The notes beneath the pieces are model-generated. The model did no database searches. It was not told where the DNA came from and saw nothing but the letters and a program-made list of their open reading frames with translations. From the IMG/VR virus record IMGVR_UViG_3300043399_000877, positions 1-64,000 of that record: a stretch of 64,000 bases of DNA. One strand, given 5' to 3'. The position numbers and the translations under genes were made by a program. This document shows, in pieces, positions 10,863 to 39,400 of this stretch. Within the stretch, counting starts at the first letter, position 1, and every line of letters starts with the position of its first letter.

Positions 10863-11489
10863 TCAAGTTAAGTTTTTTAGTGCAGTTATTATCTGGTCTC
10901 TAGTCCAAATACACACATTTCGTTTTACAAACGACGGAAGAGTGTCATTTATAGAAAACACTGGATCAGGAAAATTAAATGGGTGTTTTTTAAAGTTAAG
11001 CTCTGCATAACCGCCAGTCGTTATGTTTACATTTTCTGCAGGAGTATCGTGGCAGGTAGTAAACAGAAGTGGCGTACCACTTCTTAAAAAATTATTTAAC
11101 GTTGCATATATGTCTTTGAAAGACATATGAAACATGCAATCTCTACAAAGCATCATATCTGCTTGCGGTAACGGGTCAACTGTTATATCCATAACTCTAA
11201 GATCCAGGTTTGGAAACTTAGCCCGGTTTTTTTCTATCAAAAAATCAACTACGTCGGCACCGATATACTTTATATCAAGGGTGTCAACTAATGTTCCCAT
11301 CCACGTAAGGTCACCACATCCAGCATCAAAAAGTGTTTTTACATTAAACTGCTCGATTATGCCGGGAAAGGCTGATCTTAATTGTTCTGTGTACCATAAA
11401 GAAGATCCGGGACCACTCAAAGGTGTATCACCCTGTCCGCCCCATTCTTCATTTTTGTATATTTTTGAAAATATTTCTTTATTGCTCAT
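10863..11489 (-). CDS. Class I SAM-dependent methyltransferase
   Basis: SGPGS, LFDAGCGD, YIGADVV, DMMLCRDC motifs. Confidence 0.85.
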   Translation of the reverse strand: MSNKEIFSKIYKNEEWGGQGDTPLSGPGSSLWYTEQLRSAFPGIIEQFNVKTLFDAGCGDLTWMGTLVDTLDIKYIGADVVDFLIEKNRAKFPNLDLRVMDITVDPLPQADMMLCRDCMFHMSFKDIYATLNNFLRSGTPLLFTTCHDTPAENVNITTGGYAELNFKKHPFNFPDPVFSINDTLPSFVKRNVCIWTRDQIITALKNLT

Positions 11490-11508
11490 ACAATATTTAG
11501 TCGTTTTT

Positions 11509-12520
11509 GCATAGCTTGAGATTACAGCATGCTTCGAGTGCCTTTCTGGAGTACCACCGGCCTTGCGAGCCGTGTTGCCAGTTTATCCACTAAAGCCAGT
11601 TACGGTCATTCAGTATCACTCATGGTCGCCTTGTTGAGGAGTGGCATTTCTCCTGTCGCACGTTGCTATTCGTCCATCAATCCTTCGCCTGCCTTGCGAG
11701 CAGTTCACTTCCGCTAAGAAGTTACGCTATCTTTCCGAACAACTACATCAGCCTTGCGAGCATCCGTAGACCACATTCTCTTTCGAGTGTGGTATTAGAC
11801 CACTTTCACAACGTACCGGGACAGTCTTTCGCTTTTGAGTCAATAGTAGGACTTGAACCTACAGTCGACGGTTCCATAAAACCGTTGCATTACCATTATG
11901 CAATATTGCGAACCTACTTCGATGTGCTGTCCCAGTTGCACCATGTCTTGTTAGACACAGTATACAACACACCGACTGTCTTTCAGCTTGCGGCTTACTC
12001 AACCTTACTTCACGAGTCCGGGGCCTAACCCTTCTTCGCTTGTAATGCTACCTAGCCTTTGCTTGCGGGCTCAGACAGTGTAGCTACCTGTTGATATTCA
12101 GCACTCGTTAGTTTGGCTGAAAGCTGTTCGGGCGCCAACCCTCTTACCACTCACCGACTGGCTCTGTGGCTATCCTTTCGGACAACTCTCCTAACTTAAT
12201 GCCTACCGCCATTCTACTGACGGGACTTGCTTTCGCGTCATTGCGAGTCAAGTCTAATCCAGGCTTGTATGAACGAACCATTGCTGGTGCCAGTTTATAG
12301 GAAACCTGGCCTTGGGTGTGTTACCACACTTATTCTAGTGACGTCATACCGCCAATCTTTAACACAAAGCCCACGTTTCACAACGTTAACTTTGCGAGTC
12401 TCTGTTTTTAACTGTACCCCAAAACGTTGCCAATTGACTGGCTGGTTATACCTTGTTGGGTAGGATACGGATAAACTCCGTTTTTTGCCACATACAGTTA
12501 AAAACAGAGCGTTTACTCTG
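11509..12520 (-). ncRNA. Large structured ncRNA, GOLLD-like candidate
   Basis: ~1 kb with no credible minus-strand ORF, many GNRA-capped hairpins (GCTCGCAAGGC three times, CCGAAAGG, CTCGAAAG), perfect 17-bp stem 12400-12416/12493-12509, embedded tRNA-like domain, own promoter + boxA. Family identity not confirmed by a covariance search. Confidence 0.6.
11839..11910 (-). tRNA. Degenerate tRNA-His-like element embedded in the large ncRNA
   Basis: D-arm GCAT-AATGGTA-ATGC, ACGGT/ACCGT stem with 8-nt loop TTTATGGA, T-arm GTAGG-TTCAAGT-CCTAC; weak acceptor, no CCA. Confidence 0.6.
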
Positions 12521-12524
12521 TTTG

Positions 12525-12542
12525 CTAAATTTTCAAAGAGCG
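12525..12542 (-). promoter_or_regulatory. rrn-type boxA antitermination element
   Basis: CGCTCTTTGAAAATTTAG vs E. coli rrn boxA TGCTCTTTAACAATTTA, ~25 nt after the promoter. Confidence 0.7.
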
Positions 12543-12568
12543 TGTAACTACTGTTACGTTATGTTGTT

Positions 12569-12596
12569 AATATAGCAGCTAGTGCAGCAATGTCAA
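12569..12596 (-). promoter_or_regulatory. Sigma70-type promoter for the large ncRNA
   Basis: GTTGTTGACA-N16-TATATTAACAAC; nearly identical flanks at 12755-12782. Confidence 0.75.
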
Positions 12597-12754
12597 CAAC
12601 TATTTTGGTCTTGTTGCGGACTGTGTTTTTCTTTGCACAAAAATGTAAGGAACAGTCTTTGCAACGTCGTTTTAGTATACCGCGCAGTGTGTTTTTTCAT
12701 CCAAAGAAAGTATTTTAAGGAACACTGTTTGCGGCGTCGTTTTGTCGTGTTGTT

Positions 12755-12782
12755 AATATAGCAGCTCTTGCAAGTTTGTCAA
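12755..12782 (-). promoter_or_regulatory. Sigma70-type promoter driving hairpin units 3-4
   Basis: GTTGTTGACA-N16-TATATTAACAAC. Confidence 0.75.
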
Positions 12783-12791
12783 CAACTAAAT

Positions 12792-12875
12792 TGGTACACA
12801 CATCGTCTGCAGAATTGAACTGCGATCAGTCCCTATAGGACTAGCACGACCTTTGTGCTATGAACGATGTGCGTA
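12792..12875 (-). ncRNA. tRNA-like RNA with 12-bp acceptor-like stem and ACCA end
   Basis: TACGCACATCGT/ACGATGTGTGTA-CCA, T-arm GCAG-TTCAATT-CTGC, two internal hairpins AGCAC/GTGCT and GTCC/GGAC. Confidence 0.65.
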
Positions 12876-13020
12876 TAATTTAACTTGCGGCGTGTGTTTT
12901 GCTGATTTAAAGGTCAATTATTAAGGAACACGCTATGCAAGTATTGTGTAACCGGGCCGCGGATTGTGAGTTTTTTCCAAATAAAAATATAAGGAACAAT
13001 CTGTGCGGCCCGGTATTCTG

Positions 13021-14757
13021 TTAGTTCAGCAGCAGGTTTTCCAACCGGTCGTAGCTGAAGCTGCCGTAGCTGAGATCGTGATCGTATTCTACACCGTCTG
13101 CGCGATCCAAGTCGTAGCTGATGCCGGCGGCATCCAACAGTTGGCTCACAGTCCAGAAACGGCTGGTACCACGAGCAACAACAGCAGTTGACTTGTTGTC
13201 CACACTCCAACGGTTATCGTTGAGACGACCCTGGTAGACAGTGAAGGTGTTGTTGTTGACAAAACCGATCACATTACCGCGGCTATCCAGCGAACCCTTT
13301 TCGCGAATTACGACGTCCTCAATCCAACGATCCTTGCCGTCACGACCCACGACCAGTTCAAACCCAGCACCGTTGTTACCACTGAAGATGTTAACAAACA
13401 GGCCGTATTCGACACCGGTACTGGTCATGAATTCCATAGCACCGTTGCGAGCGCTGGTCATATCACCACTGAAGGTAACCGGATTGCTCTTGCTGTAACC
13501 ACTCCATGCACCCCAACCAGTACGATGACCGCTGCGGTCAATAGTGCTGAGATCGAGGTCATGTGCGCCCCAGTCGTCTTGCCAGTAAACACCGGCGCTG
13601 ATACGTCCACCACTCACGGTGATGTTGGTACCGTAGGGCAGGTTACCCAGTGCTTGCTTGCGGCTGATCGGAAGACCGTAATCAACAGTGCTATCCAGCA
13701 AAATACGCTTGCCCTGAAGACCAGCAAGATCGCGGCGGAGGCTAGCAACAATCATGTCACGGACACGATTCAGTCCAGCAGTATCACGAACCGCGCGGCC
13801 TGTTTCAAGATGCACTTTACCGTTGCGAACAATAAATGCGTCGGTATCCTGACCGGTGTGCTTGTACTCGATCAAGTTCAGGATCTTGAAGCGGTCACGA
13901 AGGCTAACCTTCTCAAGCGCCGTCTGGTCTGCACGACCAGCCAGTGCCAGTGCAAGGAACCGCTTGCCGATCGGTTCGTGAACCGGGACATGGTTGCGCT
14001 TGCTGAGTCGGGTGATACGGTTAATCACGTTACGATTGACAGCTCGCTTTGCAGCAAGGATCAACGGCTTGTGGCGGTTGAACACCTGTGCCAGCGGCAT
14101 TTCGTGTGCTTCTAGAAACTTGGTAGTAATCTGGCTGCAAACTTTGATGCTGTCAATAACCTGACGGCTCTTGATCAGCAGGGTTTTTCCGGTTGCAACC
14201 TTCACCATATAACGAACAGCGTCGTCACCGTTGTTGAAACGGTCGCGATTGGGATTGAACAGTTCAACCCGCAGTTCGTTATTACGAATCTGGTTTACAT
14301 CGTAGTCGATGTTGAAGTCCTGGATGATCTGACGAACAAGATCAGAATCTTTAACCGGAGCATTTGCATAAATCAGTGCGCGAACACGATCAGCAAGTTG
14401 CTCAACAGTGATACCCTGAACATAGGTCATAACCATAACCTGGCCTTCTTCAACTTCCAGGTCAAACAGGCCCGGACGATTGAGACCGTAAACTTCCACG
14501 TAGTGGAGCAGTTGCTTGGTCACCAGCTGAACAAGGCTGGCAGTATCACGCTCAACACGCCCGAAAAGGGTGCGAATAGCGAGCGGACTGCGGGTTGCCA
14601 TCAACACAGCCCTATGAACCGAGTTGGGTTCAAAGTCGGTGACAACAGCCAGTTTTTCAACCAACGAAGTGTTAACCACGCCGGTCGTCGCTCCGGGTTC
14701 TACAACCAGAGCATTGAACAGTTTAAGAACGTTTGCTTGTGCAGTCTGATTGTACAT
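13021..14757 (-). CDS. Conserved large-phage protein, helical N-terminal region with TerD-like C-terminal domain
   Basis: Start MYNQ at 14757 (RBS AAGGAG); C-terminal GVYW...HDLDLS...TGW...VTFSGDMTSARNGAMEF resembles TerD-family motifs; GC-richer codon usage typical of highly expressed genes. Confidence 0.6.
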   Translation of the reverse strand: MYNQTAQANVLKLFNALVVEPGATTGVVNTSLVEKLAVVTDFEPNSVHRAVLMATRSPLAIRTLFGRVERDTASLVQLVTKQLLHYVEVYGLNRPGLFDLEVEEGQVMVMTYVQGITVEQLADRVRALIYANAPVKDSDLVRQIIQDFNIDYDVNQIRNNELRVELFNPNRDRFNNGDDAVRYMVKVATGKTLLIKSRQVIDSIKVCSQITTKFLEAHEMPLAQVFNRHKPLILAAKRAVNRNVINRITRLSKRNHVPVHEPIGKRFLALALAGRADQTALEKVSLRDRFKILNLIEYKHTGQDTDAFIVRNGKVHLETGRAVRDTAGLNRVRDMIVASLRRDLAGLQGKRILLDSTVDYGLPISRKQALGNLPYGTNITVSGGRISAGVYWQDDWGAHDLDLSTIDRSGHRTGWGAWSGYSKSNPVTFSGDMTSARNGAMEFMTSTGVEYGLFVNIFSGNNGAGFELVVGRDGKDRWIEDVVIREKGSLDSRGNVIGFVNNNTFTVYQGRLNDNRWSVDNKSTAVVARGTSRFWTVSQLLDAAGISYDLDRADGVEYDHDLSYGSFSYDRLENLLLN

Positions 14758-14831
14758 CGTTGTCTCCTTTGTATGCACACTTTATAACAGTTGTCGCGTG
14801 TTGCGTCAAGTGTTATTTTGAAGTCTTTATT

Positions 14832-15227
14832 TTAGTCTTTATGGTGTTGCCAAAGTTTGTCTGAACCACCTAGGTGACCCCAGTCAGAGTCGACAACCAT
14901 TTTTGAACTAATACCGCCGCGCGGGCGGAAAGTAATTTCAAGACGAATACGAAATGGATCGTAGGCTTCCATCAAATGCTTATACATCACGTCTGTAGCC
15001 CTCTCGTATGAAATTACGGTATCTCGATATTGTATCAGATACTCTTTGAGAGATTTTAGTTCAATTGTTTTTTCTTTACCATGAAACCAAATCTTGATAT
15101 GTCCAAAGTCTGGTTGGTTTTTCACCCCAAGAAATGTAAATTCCGGAATATCAATCTGTTGTTCATATCCAGCGGCAGCATTTGGTAAAGATTTTAGTGT
15201 ATTTTCAATTGTATTCCAAAGTTTCAT
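14832..15227 (-). CDS. queF: QueF-like T-fold protein (catalytic Cys replaced)
   Basis: PEFTFLGVKNQPDFG, ELKSLKEY QueF motif, ISYE, FRPRGGISS. Confidence 0.75.
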   Translation of the reverse strand: MKLWNTIENTLKSLPNAAAGYEQQIDIPEFTFLGVKNQPDFGHIKIWFHGKEKTIELKSLKEYLIQYRDTVISYERATDVMYKHLMEAYDPFRIRLEITFRPRGGISSKMVVDSDWGHLGGSDKLWQHHKD

Positions 15228-17331: not shown

Positions 17332-17687
17332 GTCTCTACAAGGTATAGCAATCTACGACATTTCTTTCTCCTTTTGTCATATATGGTGACAGCCTAACAG
17401 TCGATCTTAATGGGTATTAGCACTGGCAGGTTCCCATTTCCTGCATCTCTTCGCTTTCGCTACTTTACCGTTTCTGGTGTGTGAGGCGGGTGTTCTCACC
17501 TCAGTGCCGCAGGGTTTCTGGTTTGCTGTCTCTACTACAAACCCTTTTTCGAATTGGCGACCACTGTTAGCCGCTGTTGCGACCCCCAACACGTTGTCCT
17601 GCCCCATCGGGGGCCTTGGCGTGTTTTTGTATTGGGATTTAGCATCCAAGTATCCAATCGCGACAGTGGGGGCGCATGGATACTGAT

Positions 17688-17762
17688 TGGCGCGTGTGGA
17701 GGGACTCGAACCCACAACTGTACGCTTTAGAGGCGTCTGCTCTACCATTGAGCTACACATGC
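17688..17762 (-). tRNA. Amber suppressor-type tRNA (anticodon CTA)
   Basis: GCATGTGTAGCTCAATGGTAGAGC-AGACGC-CT-CTA-AA-GCGT...GTGGGTTCGAGTCCCTC-CACACGC-G-CCA. Confidence 0.85.
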
Positions 17763-18190: not shown

Positions 18191-18871
18191 TCAACAATTT
18201 TTTGTAACTTTAAAAAACAATTGCATTTCGTTGTCTTTTAAAACTTGTATATCACCTGATATAGTGTACATATCTAACAAATTCCTCAAGTAAGGAACAT
18301 CTGCGTCGTCAAATAACACTACGTCATTGGGAGCGGCTAAATCTATCACATTGGAGATATCTGCATTAGCATCATGCACAGTATGTGATCCATCAATTAC
18401 CCATCCAATTTTTTTGTTTCTAATTTCTGGATAAAAATTAAAAATATTTGGTAACACATTTTTTGAGTCGCCAATTCTTAATTCAATTCTATCGCCATAG
18501 ATCTGTTTTAGGTAATTGAAGCACGGAACTGTATATCTGTGAATGCCAACATCTATGCCCACATAGTTCAAAGATTTATTTGCAGTTAGGGCCAACATGG
18601 CGCTGTGTCCACCGTTAAATCCAATTTCAACCACAACATCACATACAGATGCAAACATTGCATAAAGTTTACGTTTATCAGAAAAACCTTTATGTAATGA
18701 TGATCTATCTTTTTCTAGATCATAATAAAAAATATTTCCTTCTAAAGGTTCTTTTGTTTTTGATATTGTTTTGTTTAACCCATGTAGTATTTTTTTATAC
18801 TCTTGATAAAAAACTTCTTCATGGTTACATTGTTCATTTAACAGATGGCGTATTTCATTATTAATAATCAT
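18191..18871 (-). CDS. Class I SAM-dependent methyltransferase (Methyltransf_24-like)
   Basis: VEIGFNGGHS, GIDVG, GDS, VIDGSH, LFDD; AT-rich. Confidence 0.8.
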   Translation of the reverse strand: MIINNEIRHLLNEQCNHEEVFYQEYKKILHGLNKTISKTKEPLEGNIFYYDLEKDRSSLHKGFSDKRKLYAMFASVCDVVVEIGFNGGHSAMLALTANKSLNYVGIDVGIHRYTVPCFNYLKQIYGDRIELRIGDSKNVLPNIFNFYPEIRNKKIGWVIDGSHTVHDANADISNVIDLAAPNDVVLFDDADVPYLRNLLDMYTISGDIQVLKDNEMQLFFKVTKNC

Positions 18872-38637: not shown

Positions 38638-38814
38638 AACTAACCTCTTTACGAATATTTAGTTAATTATGAAATAGTTCACTTACAGTTTCAGAGTGGT
38701 GCGTTTTGTATGTCCACTATTCGAATCCTGTCGGTGCAGAACCGATTATATCTGCACAAGACTACATTCCCAGCCTCTCAGACTATGTCATCGATTTTTG
38801 CCGTCTGTAAGTAA

Positions 38815-39148
38815 GTGCAACGGTTCTGTTGCTAGGTCCGTTGCCAACCCCCGGTCGCTTATTAGGCGGCCATTGCCATTTCTGGCGCTGCGTTAATATT
38901 TGCAGTTATCATTTTCTTCGCGGTAACGGCGCTTAGATCCCGGTGACTCCATCCTGCCTAGTTCGTACATCGATCCTGTTTCGGCCCCATCAAAGATACA
39001 TGCACATACGTCCTACTCCTGCTTCCAGCGTGTCGCTATCAACATAGGTTTTCGGAAAATCGCTGTACCTAGTATGACATGTATCTATGGTGGAGCCGTC
39101 GGGTACCGCCCCCGAGTCTGTCCCGTGTTCGGTGAACTTCAACGTCAC
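38815..39148 (-). ncRNA. ssrA: Circularly permuted two-piece tmRNA (alphaproteobacterial type)
   Basis: Acceptor piece ...GACTCGGGGGCGGTACCCGACGGCTCCACCA (CCA end at 39088) precedes coding piece GGGGCCGAAACAGGATCGA (starts 38988); 7-bp acceptor with G3-U70; tag ORF 38903-38862 ANINAAPEMAMAA*. Confidence 0.92.
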
Positions 39149-39154
39149 ATGTTA

Positions 39155-39183
39155 TTTATACACTTATTCTATACTAGCGTCAA
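39155..39183 (-). promoter_or_regulatory. tmRNA promoter: sigma70 TTGACG-N17-TATAAA overlapping a TATAAATA late promoter
   Basis: CTTGACGCTAGTATAGAATAAGTGTATAAATAAC. Confidence 0.7.
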
Positions 39184-39400
39184 GATATTTCTTGTATTCT
39201 TCCAATTTGTCTTTTTCCAAAACCTCGTCAAGGACAATATTAGGGTATTTAAGGTAAGCAAAAGTCTTTTCTCGATCAGTCAGCCAAACCACTTTACCAC
39301 CTGCTACTACAAACTTAGAGAGTAGTTTCCAGTATATATAGCATCGTTTTCGCTTATCATTGCTTGGGGGTTTTGGTATCTGTGCTTGCCAGGGTTTCAT
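39164..39400 (-). CDS. Hypothetical protein
   Basis: 78-aa ORF in operon. Confidence 0.6.
   Translation of the reverse strand: MKPWQAQIPKPPSNDKRKRCYIYWKLLSKFVVAGGKVVWLTDREKTFAYLKYPNIVLDEVLEKDKLEEYKKYLDASIE

What the first reader, a model, noticed from the sequence alone, without database searches (positions are those of the whole stretch)
13021..14757. 578-aa helical/TerD-like protein as candidate partner of the hairpin array (Ro60-Y RNA-like logic)
Seen: the gene has its own promoter (~14785-14812) and a strong RBS, and the first hairpin unit starts about 6 nt after its stop codon. The C-terminus carries TerD-like motifs (DLDLS, FSGD). Established: Ro60/TROVE ring proteins are encoded next to their tRNA-mimicking Y RNAs and bind a bulged helix. 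Inference: this protein and the downstream RNAs form a ribonucleoprotein. The shared ANA/C asymmetric loop and TCCTTA would be its binding site. The TROVE analogy is functional only; I cannot see TROVE sequence motifs.
Basis: inference. Interest (0 to 1): 0.7.

Follow-up and report, generated by a model that had tools for sequence, protein, structure and literature searches.

The report
Phage protein with its own hairpin RNAs
An unannotated 578-aa phage protein with a TerD-like domain is almost always encoded right beside tandem copies of one conserved, undescribed hairpin RNA, so the two very likely work together, although binding has not been shown.

Summary
The 578-aa ORF (13021-14757, minus strand) has a near-consensus promoter and an AAGGAG ribosome-binding site. 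The first hairpin starts 6 nt after its stop codon.

- **Protein.** Residues about 380-530 have a TerD fold. Residues 1-350 match no solved structure and are not TROVE. No Pfam, PHROG, NCBIfam or PADLOC model matches the protein.
- **RNA association.** A covariance model built from the hairpins finds 209 further units in 918 kb around 83 homologues from other phages. All lie on the gene's strand. About 90% of loci have at least one unit. In six complete phage genomes the motif occurs only at this locus. No protein-coding neighbour is conserved.
- **Motif.** The unit is an outer stem, an ANA bulge opposite a single C, exactly 6 bp, then a loop opening with invariant UCCU. Compensatory changes are abundant. 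Rfam 15 has no match.
- **Position.** In distant relatives the array ends 7-30 nt before the start codon. In this window's subfamily (10 of 10 loci) it follows the stop codon.
- **Context.** The module often lies in tRNA/tmRNA islands, and here next to a GOLLD RNA.

Best reading: a cognate protein-RNA pair. Functional coupling is strongly supported. Direct binding and the downstream role are inferred. The Ro60/Y RNA comparison is an analogy only.

The parts
14781..14809 (-). Promoter-like site of the 578-aa gene: -35 TTGACG, 17-nt spacer, extended -10 TGtTATAAA
   Evidence: Read directly from the sequence. The scan does not list it because the -10 hexamer ends in A.
14764..14769 (-). Shine-Dalgarno sequence AAGGAG, 6 nt before the ATG
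   Evidence: Sequence.
13021..14757 (-). 578-aa protein (P0001), member of a large unannotated phage family
   Evidence: ORF and translation. 1127 representatives at 50% identity with E<=1e-3. No Pfam, PHROG, NCBIfam or PADLOC match. AlphaFold2 model has pLDDT 94 and pTM 0.92.
13708..14757 (-). N-terminal alpha/beta plus helical domain (residues 1-350), with no match to a solved structure. Carries invariant R228, K230, N246, H256, R311 and near-invariant Y86, E161, R182.
   Evidence: Domain model has pLDDT 94. The best VIA-align Z is 7.8, over only 68 residues. Foldseek against PDB gives nothing at E<=0.001. Rsr (2nvo) scores E 0.6, probability 0.16. Conservation.
13168..13620 (-). TerD-like beta-sandwich (residues about 380-530) with invariant W392, D400, D402, G431, D432, E442
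   Evidence: VIA-align Z 9.1 to 2qz7 and 8.4 to 2kxt. Foldseek 2qng probability 0.98. AlphaFold DB 'TerD family protein' clusters. Conservation.
12951..13014 (-). Hairpin unit 1 (10-bp outer stem, ACA bulge, GAUUGU/ACAAUC, UCCUUA loop, C bulge)
   Evidence: z -7.1. Model R1 58.2 bits.
12883..12942 (-). Hairpin unit 2 (AUA bulge). It ends 14 nt before the tRNA-like gene.
   Evidence: R1 53.4 bits.
12800..12869 (-). tRNA-like gene between units 2 and 3. ARAGORN calls it tRNA-Tyr with anticodon ATA. Rfam's tRNA model does not confirm it.
   Evidence: A metatranscriptome contig ends at 12865 with adaptor sequence.
12755..12782 (-). Sigma-70-type promoter (TTGACA, 16 nt, TG-TATATT; 11 of 12 matches) just upstream of units 3 and 4
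12679..12735 (-). Hairpin unit 3 (AAA bulge)
   Evidence: R1 61.5 bits.
12613..12665 (-). Hairpin unit 4 (AAA bulge)
   Evidence: R1 57.4 bits.
12569..12596 (-). Second, near-identical sigma-70-type promoter downstream of unit 4
11504..12382 (-). GOLLD RNA with an embedded tRNA-like element at 11841-11908. It is a neighbour in the same RNA island, not a general part of the module.
   Evidence: Rfam RF02032, 187.4 bits, at 11513-11975. An RNA-run contig spans 11504-12382 at very high depth. GOLLD is adjacent to the module in only 3 loci: the window, L090 and weakly L018.

Best explanation
The gene and the hairpins form a conserved two-part phage module: a protein of about 580-650 aa and tandem copies (1-7) of a roughly 55-nt hairpin RNA transcribed from the same strand.

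Proposed mechanism:
- The protein has a new N-terminal domain rich in invariant Arg, Lys and His, followed by a TerD-fold beta-sandwich that keeps its invariant acidic residues.
- It recognises each hairpin through two conserved features held exactly 6 bp apart. One is the ANA/C asymmetric internal loop. The other is the G-C, U-A closing pairs with the UCCU loop start.
- Because the array is co-transcribed with the gene, protein and RNA are made together.
- In most relatives the last unit abuts the start codon, so binding there would also feed back on translation.
- In this window's subfamily the units sit after the stop codon, and units 3-4 follow a promoter of their own. There they would act as free RNA partners.

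What the complex does next is unknown. Its frequent position inside tRNA/tmRNA (and here GOLLD) islands suggests a role in the phage's translation-RNA pool.

Shown: the co-occurrence, strand, position, structure, covariation and fold. Inferred: direct binding, stoichiometry and the downstream role.
For: 1. Co-occurrence.
- Model R1 was built from 13 units of six phages. It gives 182 hits at E<=1, all on the gene strand.
- Model R2 gives 209 hits at E<=0.01 in 918 kb, both strands searched, all on the gene strand.
- 74 of 83 homologue loci carry the motif, and 4 of the 9 without are cut at the gene's 5' end.
- Four further loci from other metagenomes (51-71% identity) all have 2-4 units starting 9-25 nt after the stop codon.

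2. Exclusivity.
- In six complete phage genomes (98-382 kb) every hit lies at the homologue locus.

3. Independent check.
- A regex scan without a covariance model gives 188 hits on the gene strand, 2 on the opposite strand and 1 in shuffled sequence.
- The bulges were left unconstrained. They are ANA in 170 of 188 units and C in 175 of 188.

4. RNA-level structure.
- 96.6-97.9% of stem cells are paired.
- 9 of 11 and 10 of 11 pairs show compensatory changes, and 0 of 500 shuffles reach the covariation score.
- G-U outnumbers A-C by 23 to 2 in the inner nine pairs.
- Units within one array are as diverged (61% identity) as units from different phages (57%).

5. No conserved protein neighbour in 82 loci.

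6. Evidence for free RNA rather than a pure leader.
- All 10 close-subfamily loci have 3' arrays.
- Units 3-4 in the window follow their own promoter.
- Extra units lie between tRNA genes 2-4 kb away in L001, L007, L065 and L067.
- In Phass-1 the array is about 1.3 kb downstream of the gene.
- In RNA run X14 the unit 3-4 region has contig depth 20.5, against 2-2.8 for the gene.

7. UCCU stays invariant in phages whose leaders have no Shine-Dalgarno sequence. It is therefore not there to pair with one.

8. The protein model is confident, and the conserved basic and acidic residues suit nucleic-acid and metal binding.
Against: - No binding data of any kind. The complex tool did not fold the protein-RNA job.
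- The TerD fold is not an established RNA-binding fold, and the N-terminal domain has no informative structural relative.
- In about 60 loci the array is simply a 5' leader ending 7-30 nt before the start codon. That fits a purely cis-regulatory element equally well.
- The expression evidence for the hairpins is thin. It rests on one contig in one run labelled only as probable RNA, and there was no coverage in the other RNA runs.
- Four loci with complete flanks have no detectable unit: L052, L058, L062 and L069.
- Several loci are near-duplicates, so there are roughly 70 independent loci rather than 88.
- Alignments made by the covariance model lean towards its structure.
Confidence: 0.55

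Rival explanations
1. The hairpins are only a cis-regulatory leader or operator. The protein, or a host factor, binds the unit next to the start codon to control translation or stability of this gene's own mRNA. There is no free RNP.
For: In most loci the array lies in the 5' leader, and the last unit ends 7-30 nt before the ATG, inside the ribosome's footprint. The motif is found essentially only next to this gene.
Against: All 10 close-subfamily loci, including the window, have the units after the stop codon. Window units 3-4 lie behind a tRNA-like gene and a promoter of their own. Some units sit among tRNA genes kilobases away, and in Phass-1 about 1.3 kb downstream. Up to 7 diverged copies are kept by selection, which is more than an operator needs.
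Confidence: 0.2
2. The hairpin is a protein-independent RNA element that merely travels with the gene. It could be an mRNA-end protector or processing signal for an ORF embedded in tRNA precursors, or a small RNA whose CU-rich loop pairs with other RNAs.
For: The gene often lies inside same-strand tRNA arrays: 35 of 80 loci, 305 of 305 tRNAs on the same strand, and inside or beside the main cluster in 4 of 5 complete genomes. UCCUUA equals the last six bases of 16S rRNA (own knowledge).
Against: Other ORFs in the same tRNA arrays lack the motif, and 45 of 80 loci have the motif-bearing gene with no tRNA nearby. Invariant loop and bulge nucleotides at a fixed 6-bp spacing are not needed for a stabiliser. 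UCCU is invariant where leaders lack a Shine-Dalgarno sequence. The exclusive linkage to one protein family would be unexplained.
Confidence: 0.1
3. This is a type III toxin-antitoxin-like pair. The protein is a toxin, possibly an RNase, that is neutralised by and perhaps processes the adjacent tandem RNA array.
For: The layout resembles toxIN, cptIN and tenpIN: a tandem array of short RNA units directly upstream of the protein gene on the same strand (comparison from own knowledge of Fineran 2009 and Blower 2012).
Against: The units are diverged hairpins (median 61% identity), not near-identical direct repeats. The protein is three times larger than ToxN, CptN or AbiQ, and no such fold was found. 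There is no PADLOC hit. The arrays lie downstream in the window's subfamily.
Confidence: 0.07
4. The protein is a divergent Ro60/TROVE homologue and the hairpins are Y RNAs.
For: The gene sits next to small structured RNAs with a bulged helix. The size is similar to Ro60, and the setting is a tRNA-rich locus.
Against: No TROVE or vWA match by Pfam. The best Foldseek match to Rsr (2nvo) has E 0.6, probability 0.16 and TM 0.20, and it is absent from the VIA-align lists. The C-terminal domain is TerD, not vWA. No Y RNA or YrlA family matches in Rfam.
Confidence: 0.02
5. The hairpins are a DNA-level feature: protein-binding palindromes, or single-strand DNA hairpins at the ends of a mobile element carrying the gene.
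For: They are strand-specific imperfect palindromes flanking a gene, as in IS200/IS605 or REP/RAYT systems (own knowledge). The gene appears in many unrelated phage backbones.
Against: The units are usually on one side of the gene only and are not dispersed in the genome. The excess of G-U over A-C (23 to 2) and the absolute strand bias point to a transcript. No transposase or HUH fold was found. A metatranscriptome contig covers units 3-4.
Confidence: 0.03

Closest known systems
Ro60 (Rsr) with Y RNA / YrlA
   Same: A protein of about 550 aa is encoded next to small structured RNAs. Their conserved feature is a helix distorted by an asymmetric bulge. The loci are linked to tRNA-like RNAs, and such pairs also occur in phages (Ro60 points from own knowledge and PMC7824862).
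   Different: No TROVE ring and no vWA domain. The C-terminal domain is TerD. The RNA is a short hairpin in tandem arrays, not a single RNA closed by its 5' and 3' ends. No Rfam Y RNA match.
Type III toxin-antitoxin systems (toxIN, cptIN, tenpIN)
   Same: A tandem array of short RNA units lies immediately upstream of, and co-oriented with, a single protein gene. In those systems the RNA binds the protein unit by unit (own knowledge).
   Different: The units here are diverged, covarying hairpins rather than near-identical repeats. The protein has an unrelated fold and is three times larger. The arrays can lie downstream of the gene. The setting is a phage tRNA island, and there is no PADLOC match.
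TerD-family proteins (PF02342; structures 2kxt, 2qz7, 2qng)
   Same: The beta-sandwich fold matches (Z 8.4-9.1). The DxDxS and SGD motifs and a conserved Glu are retained.
   Different: No sequence-level Pfam match. The acidic GDGDDE calcium loop is replaced. The domain is fused to a 350-aa domain of unknown fold. No ter operon neighbours are present, and the gene is linked to an RNA motif.
Autoregulatory RNA operators (MS2 coat protein hairpin, thrS leader, lambda N with nutL)
   Same: The hairpin or hairpins lie just before the start codon of the gene whose product would bind them. The thrS leader also uses repeated hairpin mimics (own knowledge).
   Different: There are up to seven units. 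The window's subfamily has them after the stop codon and behind separate promoters.

Membership tests
Ro60 / TROVE | TROVE domain (HEAT-repeat ring) | tested here: not met
   No Pfam hit in the query or in 64 relatives. Foldseek against Rsr 2nvo gives E 0.6, probability 0.16, TM 0.20. It is absent from the VIA-align top lists.
Ro60 / TROVE | C-terminal vWA (MIDAS) domain | tested here: not met
   The C-terminal domain is a TerD-like beta-sandwich.
Ro60 / TROVE | Partner is a Y RNA or YrlA (long terminal stem with a conserved bulged helix, tRNA-like module) | tested here: not met
   No Y RNA family reaches E<=5 in 11400-13100. The units are 50-64-nt hairpins in tandem.
TerD family (PF02342) | TerD beta-sandwich fold | tested here: met
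   VIA-align Z 9.1 (2qz7) and 8.4 (2kxt) over 133-134 residues. Foldseek 2qng probability 0.98. AlphaFold DB TerD clusters at probability 1.0.
TerD family (PF02342) | Match to the Pfam profile above its cut-off | tested here: not met
   No TerD hit at E<=1 for the query or at E<=0.01 for 64 relatives.
TerD family (PF02342) | Calcium-binding loop GDN(R/L)TG(E/A)GDGDDE (recalled from the 2kxt paper) | tested here: inconclusive
   SGD-x-T-x-A-x-x-G-A-x-E is conserved (S430, G431, D432, T434, A436, A440, E442, plus D400 and D402). The acidic GDGDDE run is absent. Metal binding was not tested.
Type III toxin-antitoxin | Tandem RNA units directly upstream of the protein gene on the same strand | tested here: inconclusive
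   True for most distant relatives. Not true for the window and the nine other close-subfamily loci, where the units follow the stop codon.
Type III toxin-antitoxin | Near-identical direct repeats | tested here: not met
   Median identity within an array is 61%, against 57% between phages.
Type III toxin-antitoxin | ToxN/AbiQ-type endoribonuclease toxin | tested here: not met
   No such structure appears among the Foldseek or VIA-align matches. No PADLOC model matches.
Any Rfam 15 family (for the hairpin) | Covariance-model match | tested here: not met
   Only sub-threshold miRNA noise on the wrong strand in the window. Nothing at E<=1 on the 7-unit array of L066. Nothing at gathering score at the arrays of 17 other loci.
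GOLLD RNA (the neighbour) | Match to RF02032 above its gathering score | tested here: met
   187.4 bits against a cut-off of 150, full model length, at 11513-11975.

The most novel reading that the evidence does not exclude
This is a widespread, previously unrecognised class of phage ribonucleoprotein. A protein combining a new N-terminal domain with a TerD-fold domain assembles on arrays of a new hairpin RNA. The complex acts on the translation-RNA pool of the infected cell (tRNAs, tmRNA, possibly GOLLD cages). Possible roles include RNA surveillance, protecting the phage's own tRNAs during infection, or sequestration.
Probability: 0.35. Interest if true: 0.88.

Novelty: new variant of a known kind. 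Interest (0 to 1): 0.78.

Why it matters
- **Scale.** The protein family is large: 1127 clusters at 50% identity. It occurs in freshwater, wastewater, estuarine and gut phages and is entirely unannotated.
- **An experimental handle.** Linking it to an equally undescribed, strongly covarying RNA motif gives both a starting point. If the pair is an RNP, it adds a new RNA-binding architecture. It would also be the first RNA-linked role for a TerD fold that I am aware of.
- **Phage RNA islands.** The module is a new player in the poorly understood tRNA/tmRNA/GOLLD islands of large phages.
- **Testable now.** Two cultured cyanophages, S-CRM01 (g174) and S-CBWM1 (gp22), carry the module.
- **Annotation.** Small ORFs called over the arrays, such as S-CRM01 g173c, are probably spurious.

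Tried and rejected
- **Complex prediction.** The protein plus hairpin unit 3 job was not folded by the tool. It gives no evidence either way.
- **Bacterial genomes.** Prophage and bacterial occurrence was therefore not surveyed.
- **Sequence search of solved structures.** Nothing meaningful with the protein or with the family profile.
- **Protein Atlas feature search of the N-domain.** Only an unnamed viral cluster at 0.87.
- **Anti-Shine-Dalgarno idea.** I considered that the UCCUUA loop pairs with the gene's own ribosome-binding site. Rejected, because UCCU is invariant in many loci whose leaders have no Shine-Dalgarno sequence.
- **HEPN RNase idea.** An R-x5-H motif sits at R250-H256. Rejected, because R250 is not conserved and no HEPN fold was found.
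- **GOLLD as a third partner.** Rejected as a general rule.
  - GOLLD occurs in 3 of 50 homologue-bearing records.
  - It is adjacent in only one of those (sub-threshold, 72 bits) and 114 kb away in another.
  - It is adjacent in the window and in L090.
- **Intrinsic terminators.** Rejected: the loops are large and there is no consistent U-tract. In L005 a true terminator follows the units.
- **Double-stranded DNA palindromes.** Rejected on strand bias and the G-U excess.
- **Literature.** Searches on TerD, tRNA clusters, S-CBWM1, S-CRM01 and GOLLD found no description of this protein family or motif.
Full report
**Setting.** The window is the first 64 kb of a 381,886-bp viral record. The region around the finding is an RNA island on the minus strand.
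- ARAGORN tRNA genes.
- Rfam finds a permuted tmRNA, a skipping-rope RNA and a GOLLD RNA.

**The observation.**
- The ORF at 13021-14757 (minus strand) encodes 578 aa.
- Upstream lie a -35 TTGACG, a 17-nt spacer and an extended -10 TGtTATAAA (14809-14781). AAGGAG sits 6 nt before the ATG.
- Six nucleotides after the TAA the first of four hairpins begins.
- The units lie at 13014-12951, 12942-12883, 12735-12679 and 12665-12613.
- Each unit consists of these elements in order:
  - an outer stem ending G-C;
  - a 3-nt ANA bulge;
  - a 6-bp stem ending GU;
  - UCCUUA;
  - a variable A/U-rich loop;
  - the return strand;
  - one bulged C;
  - the outer stem again.
- The minimum-free-energy folds reproduce this architecture.
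- The full motif occurs only these four times in the whole genome.
- Order on the minus strand:
  - the 578-aa gene;
  - hairpin units 1-2;
  - a tRNA-like gene (12869-12800);
  - a strong sigma-70-type promoter;
  - hairpin units 3-4;
  - a second, nearly identical promoter;
  - the GOLLD RNA.

**The protein.**
- No Pfam, PHROG, NCBIfam or PADLOC model matches it or its relatives.
- An exhaustive HMMER search finds 1127 cluster representatives at E<=1e-3. Nearly all are 560-650 aa. Every name given by a source is 'hypothetical protein'.
- With a 64-sequence alignment, AlphaFold2 gives a confident model: pLDDT 94, pTM 0.92.
- Residues about 380-530 have a TerD fold.
  - VIA-align Z is 9.1 to 2qz7 and 8.4 to 2kxt.
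  - Foldseek gives probability 0.98 to 2qng.
  - AlphaFold DB clusters named TerD match at probability 1.0.
They are invariant across 133 diverse relatives (D400, D402, G431, D432, E442).
- The N-terminal 350 residues were folded alone (pLDDT 94). They match no solved structure.
  - The best Z is 7.8, on a 68-residue helical piece.
  - Foldseek gives nothing at E<=0.001.
  - Deinococcus Rsr (2nvo) appears only at E 0.6, probability 0.16.
- This domain carries invariant R228, K230, N246, H256 and R311.
- The protein is therefore TerD-like by fold but is not a TROVE protein.

**The decisive comparative result.**
- tblastn against deposited phages finds the family in Synechococcus phages S-CBWM1 (gp22) and S-CRM01 (g174), and in Phass-1. 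In both cyanophages the gene lies inside the tRNA array.
- A scan of IMG/VR returned 80 loci.
- A strict pattern search showed the same hairpin immediately after the stop codon in the closest relatives L005, L006, L008 and L009. L007 carries TCCTTY variants.
- Thirteen units from six phages gave a clean alignment:
  - 97.9% of stem cells are paired;
  - 9 of 11 pairs show compensatory changes;
  - 0 of 500 shuffles reach the covariation score.
- Covariance model R1 found 182 matches at E<=1 in 928 kb. All are on the strand of the homologue.
- Model R2, rebuilt from those hits, found 209 matches at E<=0.01, again all on that strand.
- 74 of 83 loci carry the motif. Of the 9 without a confident unit, 4 are cut at the gene's 5' end, L015 has only a weak hit 1.8 kb upstream, and L052, L058, L062 and L069 have complete flanks and no hit.
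- Four more loci fetched by exact protein look-up from other metagenomes (51-71% identity) all carry 2-4 units starting 9-25 nt after the stop codon.
- In six complete genomes (98-382 kb) every match lies at the homologue locus.
- A scan independent of the covariance model required only GUUCCU, AC and stem pairing.
  - It gave 188 hits on the gene strand, 2 on the other strand and 1 in shuffled sequence.
  - The unconstrained bulges came out as ANA in 170 of 188 units and C in 175 of 188.
- G-U pairs outnumber A-C by 23 to 2 in the inner nine pairs. This points to a transcript of the gene's strand.
- Units within one array are as diverged (61% identity) as units from unrelated phages (57%). 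Selection therefore keeps the structure, and recent duplication does not explain the arrays.
- No protein-coding neighbour is conserved.
- Rfam 15 has no matching family.
- Caveats:
  - several loci are near-duplicates, so there are roughly 70 independent loci;
  - the first units were selected for pairing;
  - alignments made by the covariance model lean towards its structure.

**Position of the arrays.**
- In most relatives (25-35% identity to the window protein) 1-7 units lie in the 5' leader. The last one ends 7-30 nt before the start codon.
- In the window's subfamily (46-71% identity; 10 of 10 loci) the units follow the stop codon.
- Some phages have units on both sides of the gene (S-CRM01, L038).
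- Others have extra units between tRNA genes kilobases away (S-CBWM1, L007, L065, L067).
- In Phass-1 the array lies about 1.3 kb downstream.
- Many leaders lack any Shine-Dalgarno sequence, yet UCCU is invariant. The loop is therefore not an anti-Shine-Dalgarno device.

**Genomic context.**
- 35 of 80 loci have tRNAs within 5 kb, and all 305 of those tRNAs are on the gene's strand.
- In 4 of 5 complete genomes the gene lies inside or at the edge of the main tRNA cluster, which occupies no more than about 5% of the genome.
- A tmRNA gene is adjacent in L006 and L008.
- GOLLD is adjacent in the window, in L090 (71% identity, same order) and weakly in L018. It is absent or distant elsewhere. It shares the island but is not part of the module.

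**Expression.**
- Contigs from metatranscriptomes cover GOLLD (11504-12382) at very high depth. In run X12 the depth is about 1e5, against 13-41 for the gene.
- In run X14 a 345-nt contig over 12543-12865 (tRNA-like gene plus units 3-4) has depth 20.5, against 2-2.8 over the gene.
- This is weak support that the units are transcribed above the mRNA level. X14 is only probably RNA, small RNAs are poorly captured, and the contigs come from related strains.

**Interpretation.**
- The conserved, fixed-geometry sequence features need a specific reader. The only universally linked gene is the adjacent one.
- I therefore favour a cognate protein-RNA pair with direct binding (confidence 0.55).
- Such binding could also provide translational feedback where the array abuts the start codon.
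- Rivals are a purely cis-acting leader (0.2), a protein-independent RNA element (0.1), a type III toxin-antitoxin-like pair (0.07), a DNA-level element (0.03) and true Ro60 homology (0.02).
- Binding, stoichiometry, processing of the array and the biological role are all inferred, not shown. The complex-prediction tool did not run on a protein-RNA job.

**Novelty.** Neither the protein family nor the RNA motif appears in the curated libraries searched or in the papers found. The general kind, a protein encoded beside its cognate structured RNA, is known. Both parts and the tandem-hairpin arrangement are new.

Noticed in passing
window 11504-12382 (-): GOLLD RNA (RF02032, 187 bits) with an embedded tRNA-like element at 11841-11908. 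Metatranscriptome contigs cover it at depths thousands of times above the neighbouring gene. One contig ends in adaptor sequence at 12382, which suggests the RNA's 5' end. That would make the RNA about 880 nt long.
   Followed up: partly
window 12800-12869 (-): tRNA-like gene between hairpin units 2 and 3. ARAGORN calls it tRNA-Tyr with anticodon ATA, but Rfam's tRNA model does not report it. An RNA-run contig ends at 12865, close to the expected mature 5' end.
   Followed up: partly
window 12755-12782 and 12569-12596 (-): Two almost identical strong sigma-70-type promoters (TTGACA, 16 nt, TG-TATATT) that share flanking sequence. The second is followed about 50 nt later by a terminator-like hairpin (12523-12502). 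It may therefore drive only a very short transcript upstream of GOLLD.
   Followed up: no
window 17688-17762 (-): tRNA with anticodon CTA (ARAGORN 'tRNA-Pyl'; Rfam tRNA 60.6 bits), that is, an amber-suppressor-type tRNA. Stop-codon use in this phage was not examined. One relative carrying the module, Phass-1, belongs to the 'code 15' clade.
   Followed up: no
window 38814-39200 (-) and 17418-17509 (-): A phage-encoded permuted (two-piece) tmRNA and a skipping-rope RNA. tmRNA genes also lie directly next to the protein-hairpin module in L006 and L008, and 2 kb away in L009.
   Followed up: partly
window 14832-15227 (-): The gene just upstream of the 578-aa ORF is QueF-like (PF14489, E 3.7e-19), an enzyme of 7-deazaguanine/queuosine metabolism. 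Methyltransferase-like ORFs lie at 10863-11489 and 18191-18871.
   Followed up: no
L002 4587-4733 (S-CRM01 g173c); L088 5870-6052; L090 5826-5993: Small annotated or called ORFs overlap the hairpin arrays. In S-CRM01 the ORF is antisense to them. These are probably spurious gene calls.
   Followed up: no
L018 4090-4736 (= L087): In a phage whose protein is only about 30% identical to the window's, the order is GOLLD-like RNA (72 bits, below cut-off), a 114-nt tRNA match, two hairpin units, then the gene. This is a second, rearranged co-location of GOLLD with the module.
   Followed up: partly
L003 1-2791 (Phass-1): NAD-salvage genes (nicotinamidase, PRPP synthetase, nicotinamide phosphoribosyltransferase) lie just upstream of the family member in Phass-1. 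L088 also has NAMPT and NUDIX genes nearby. This may be coincidence.
   Followed up: no
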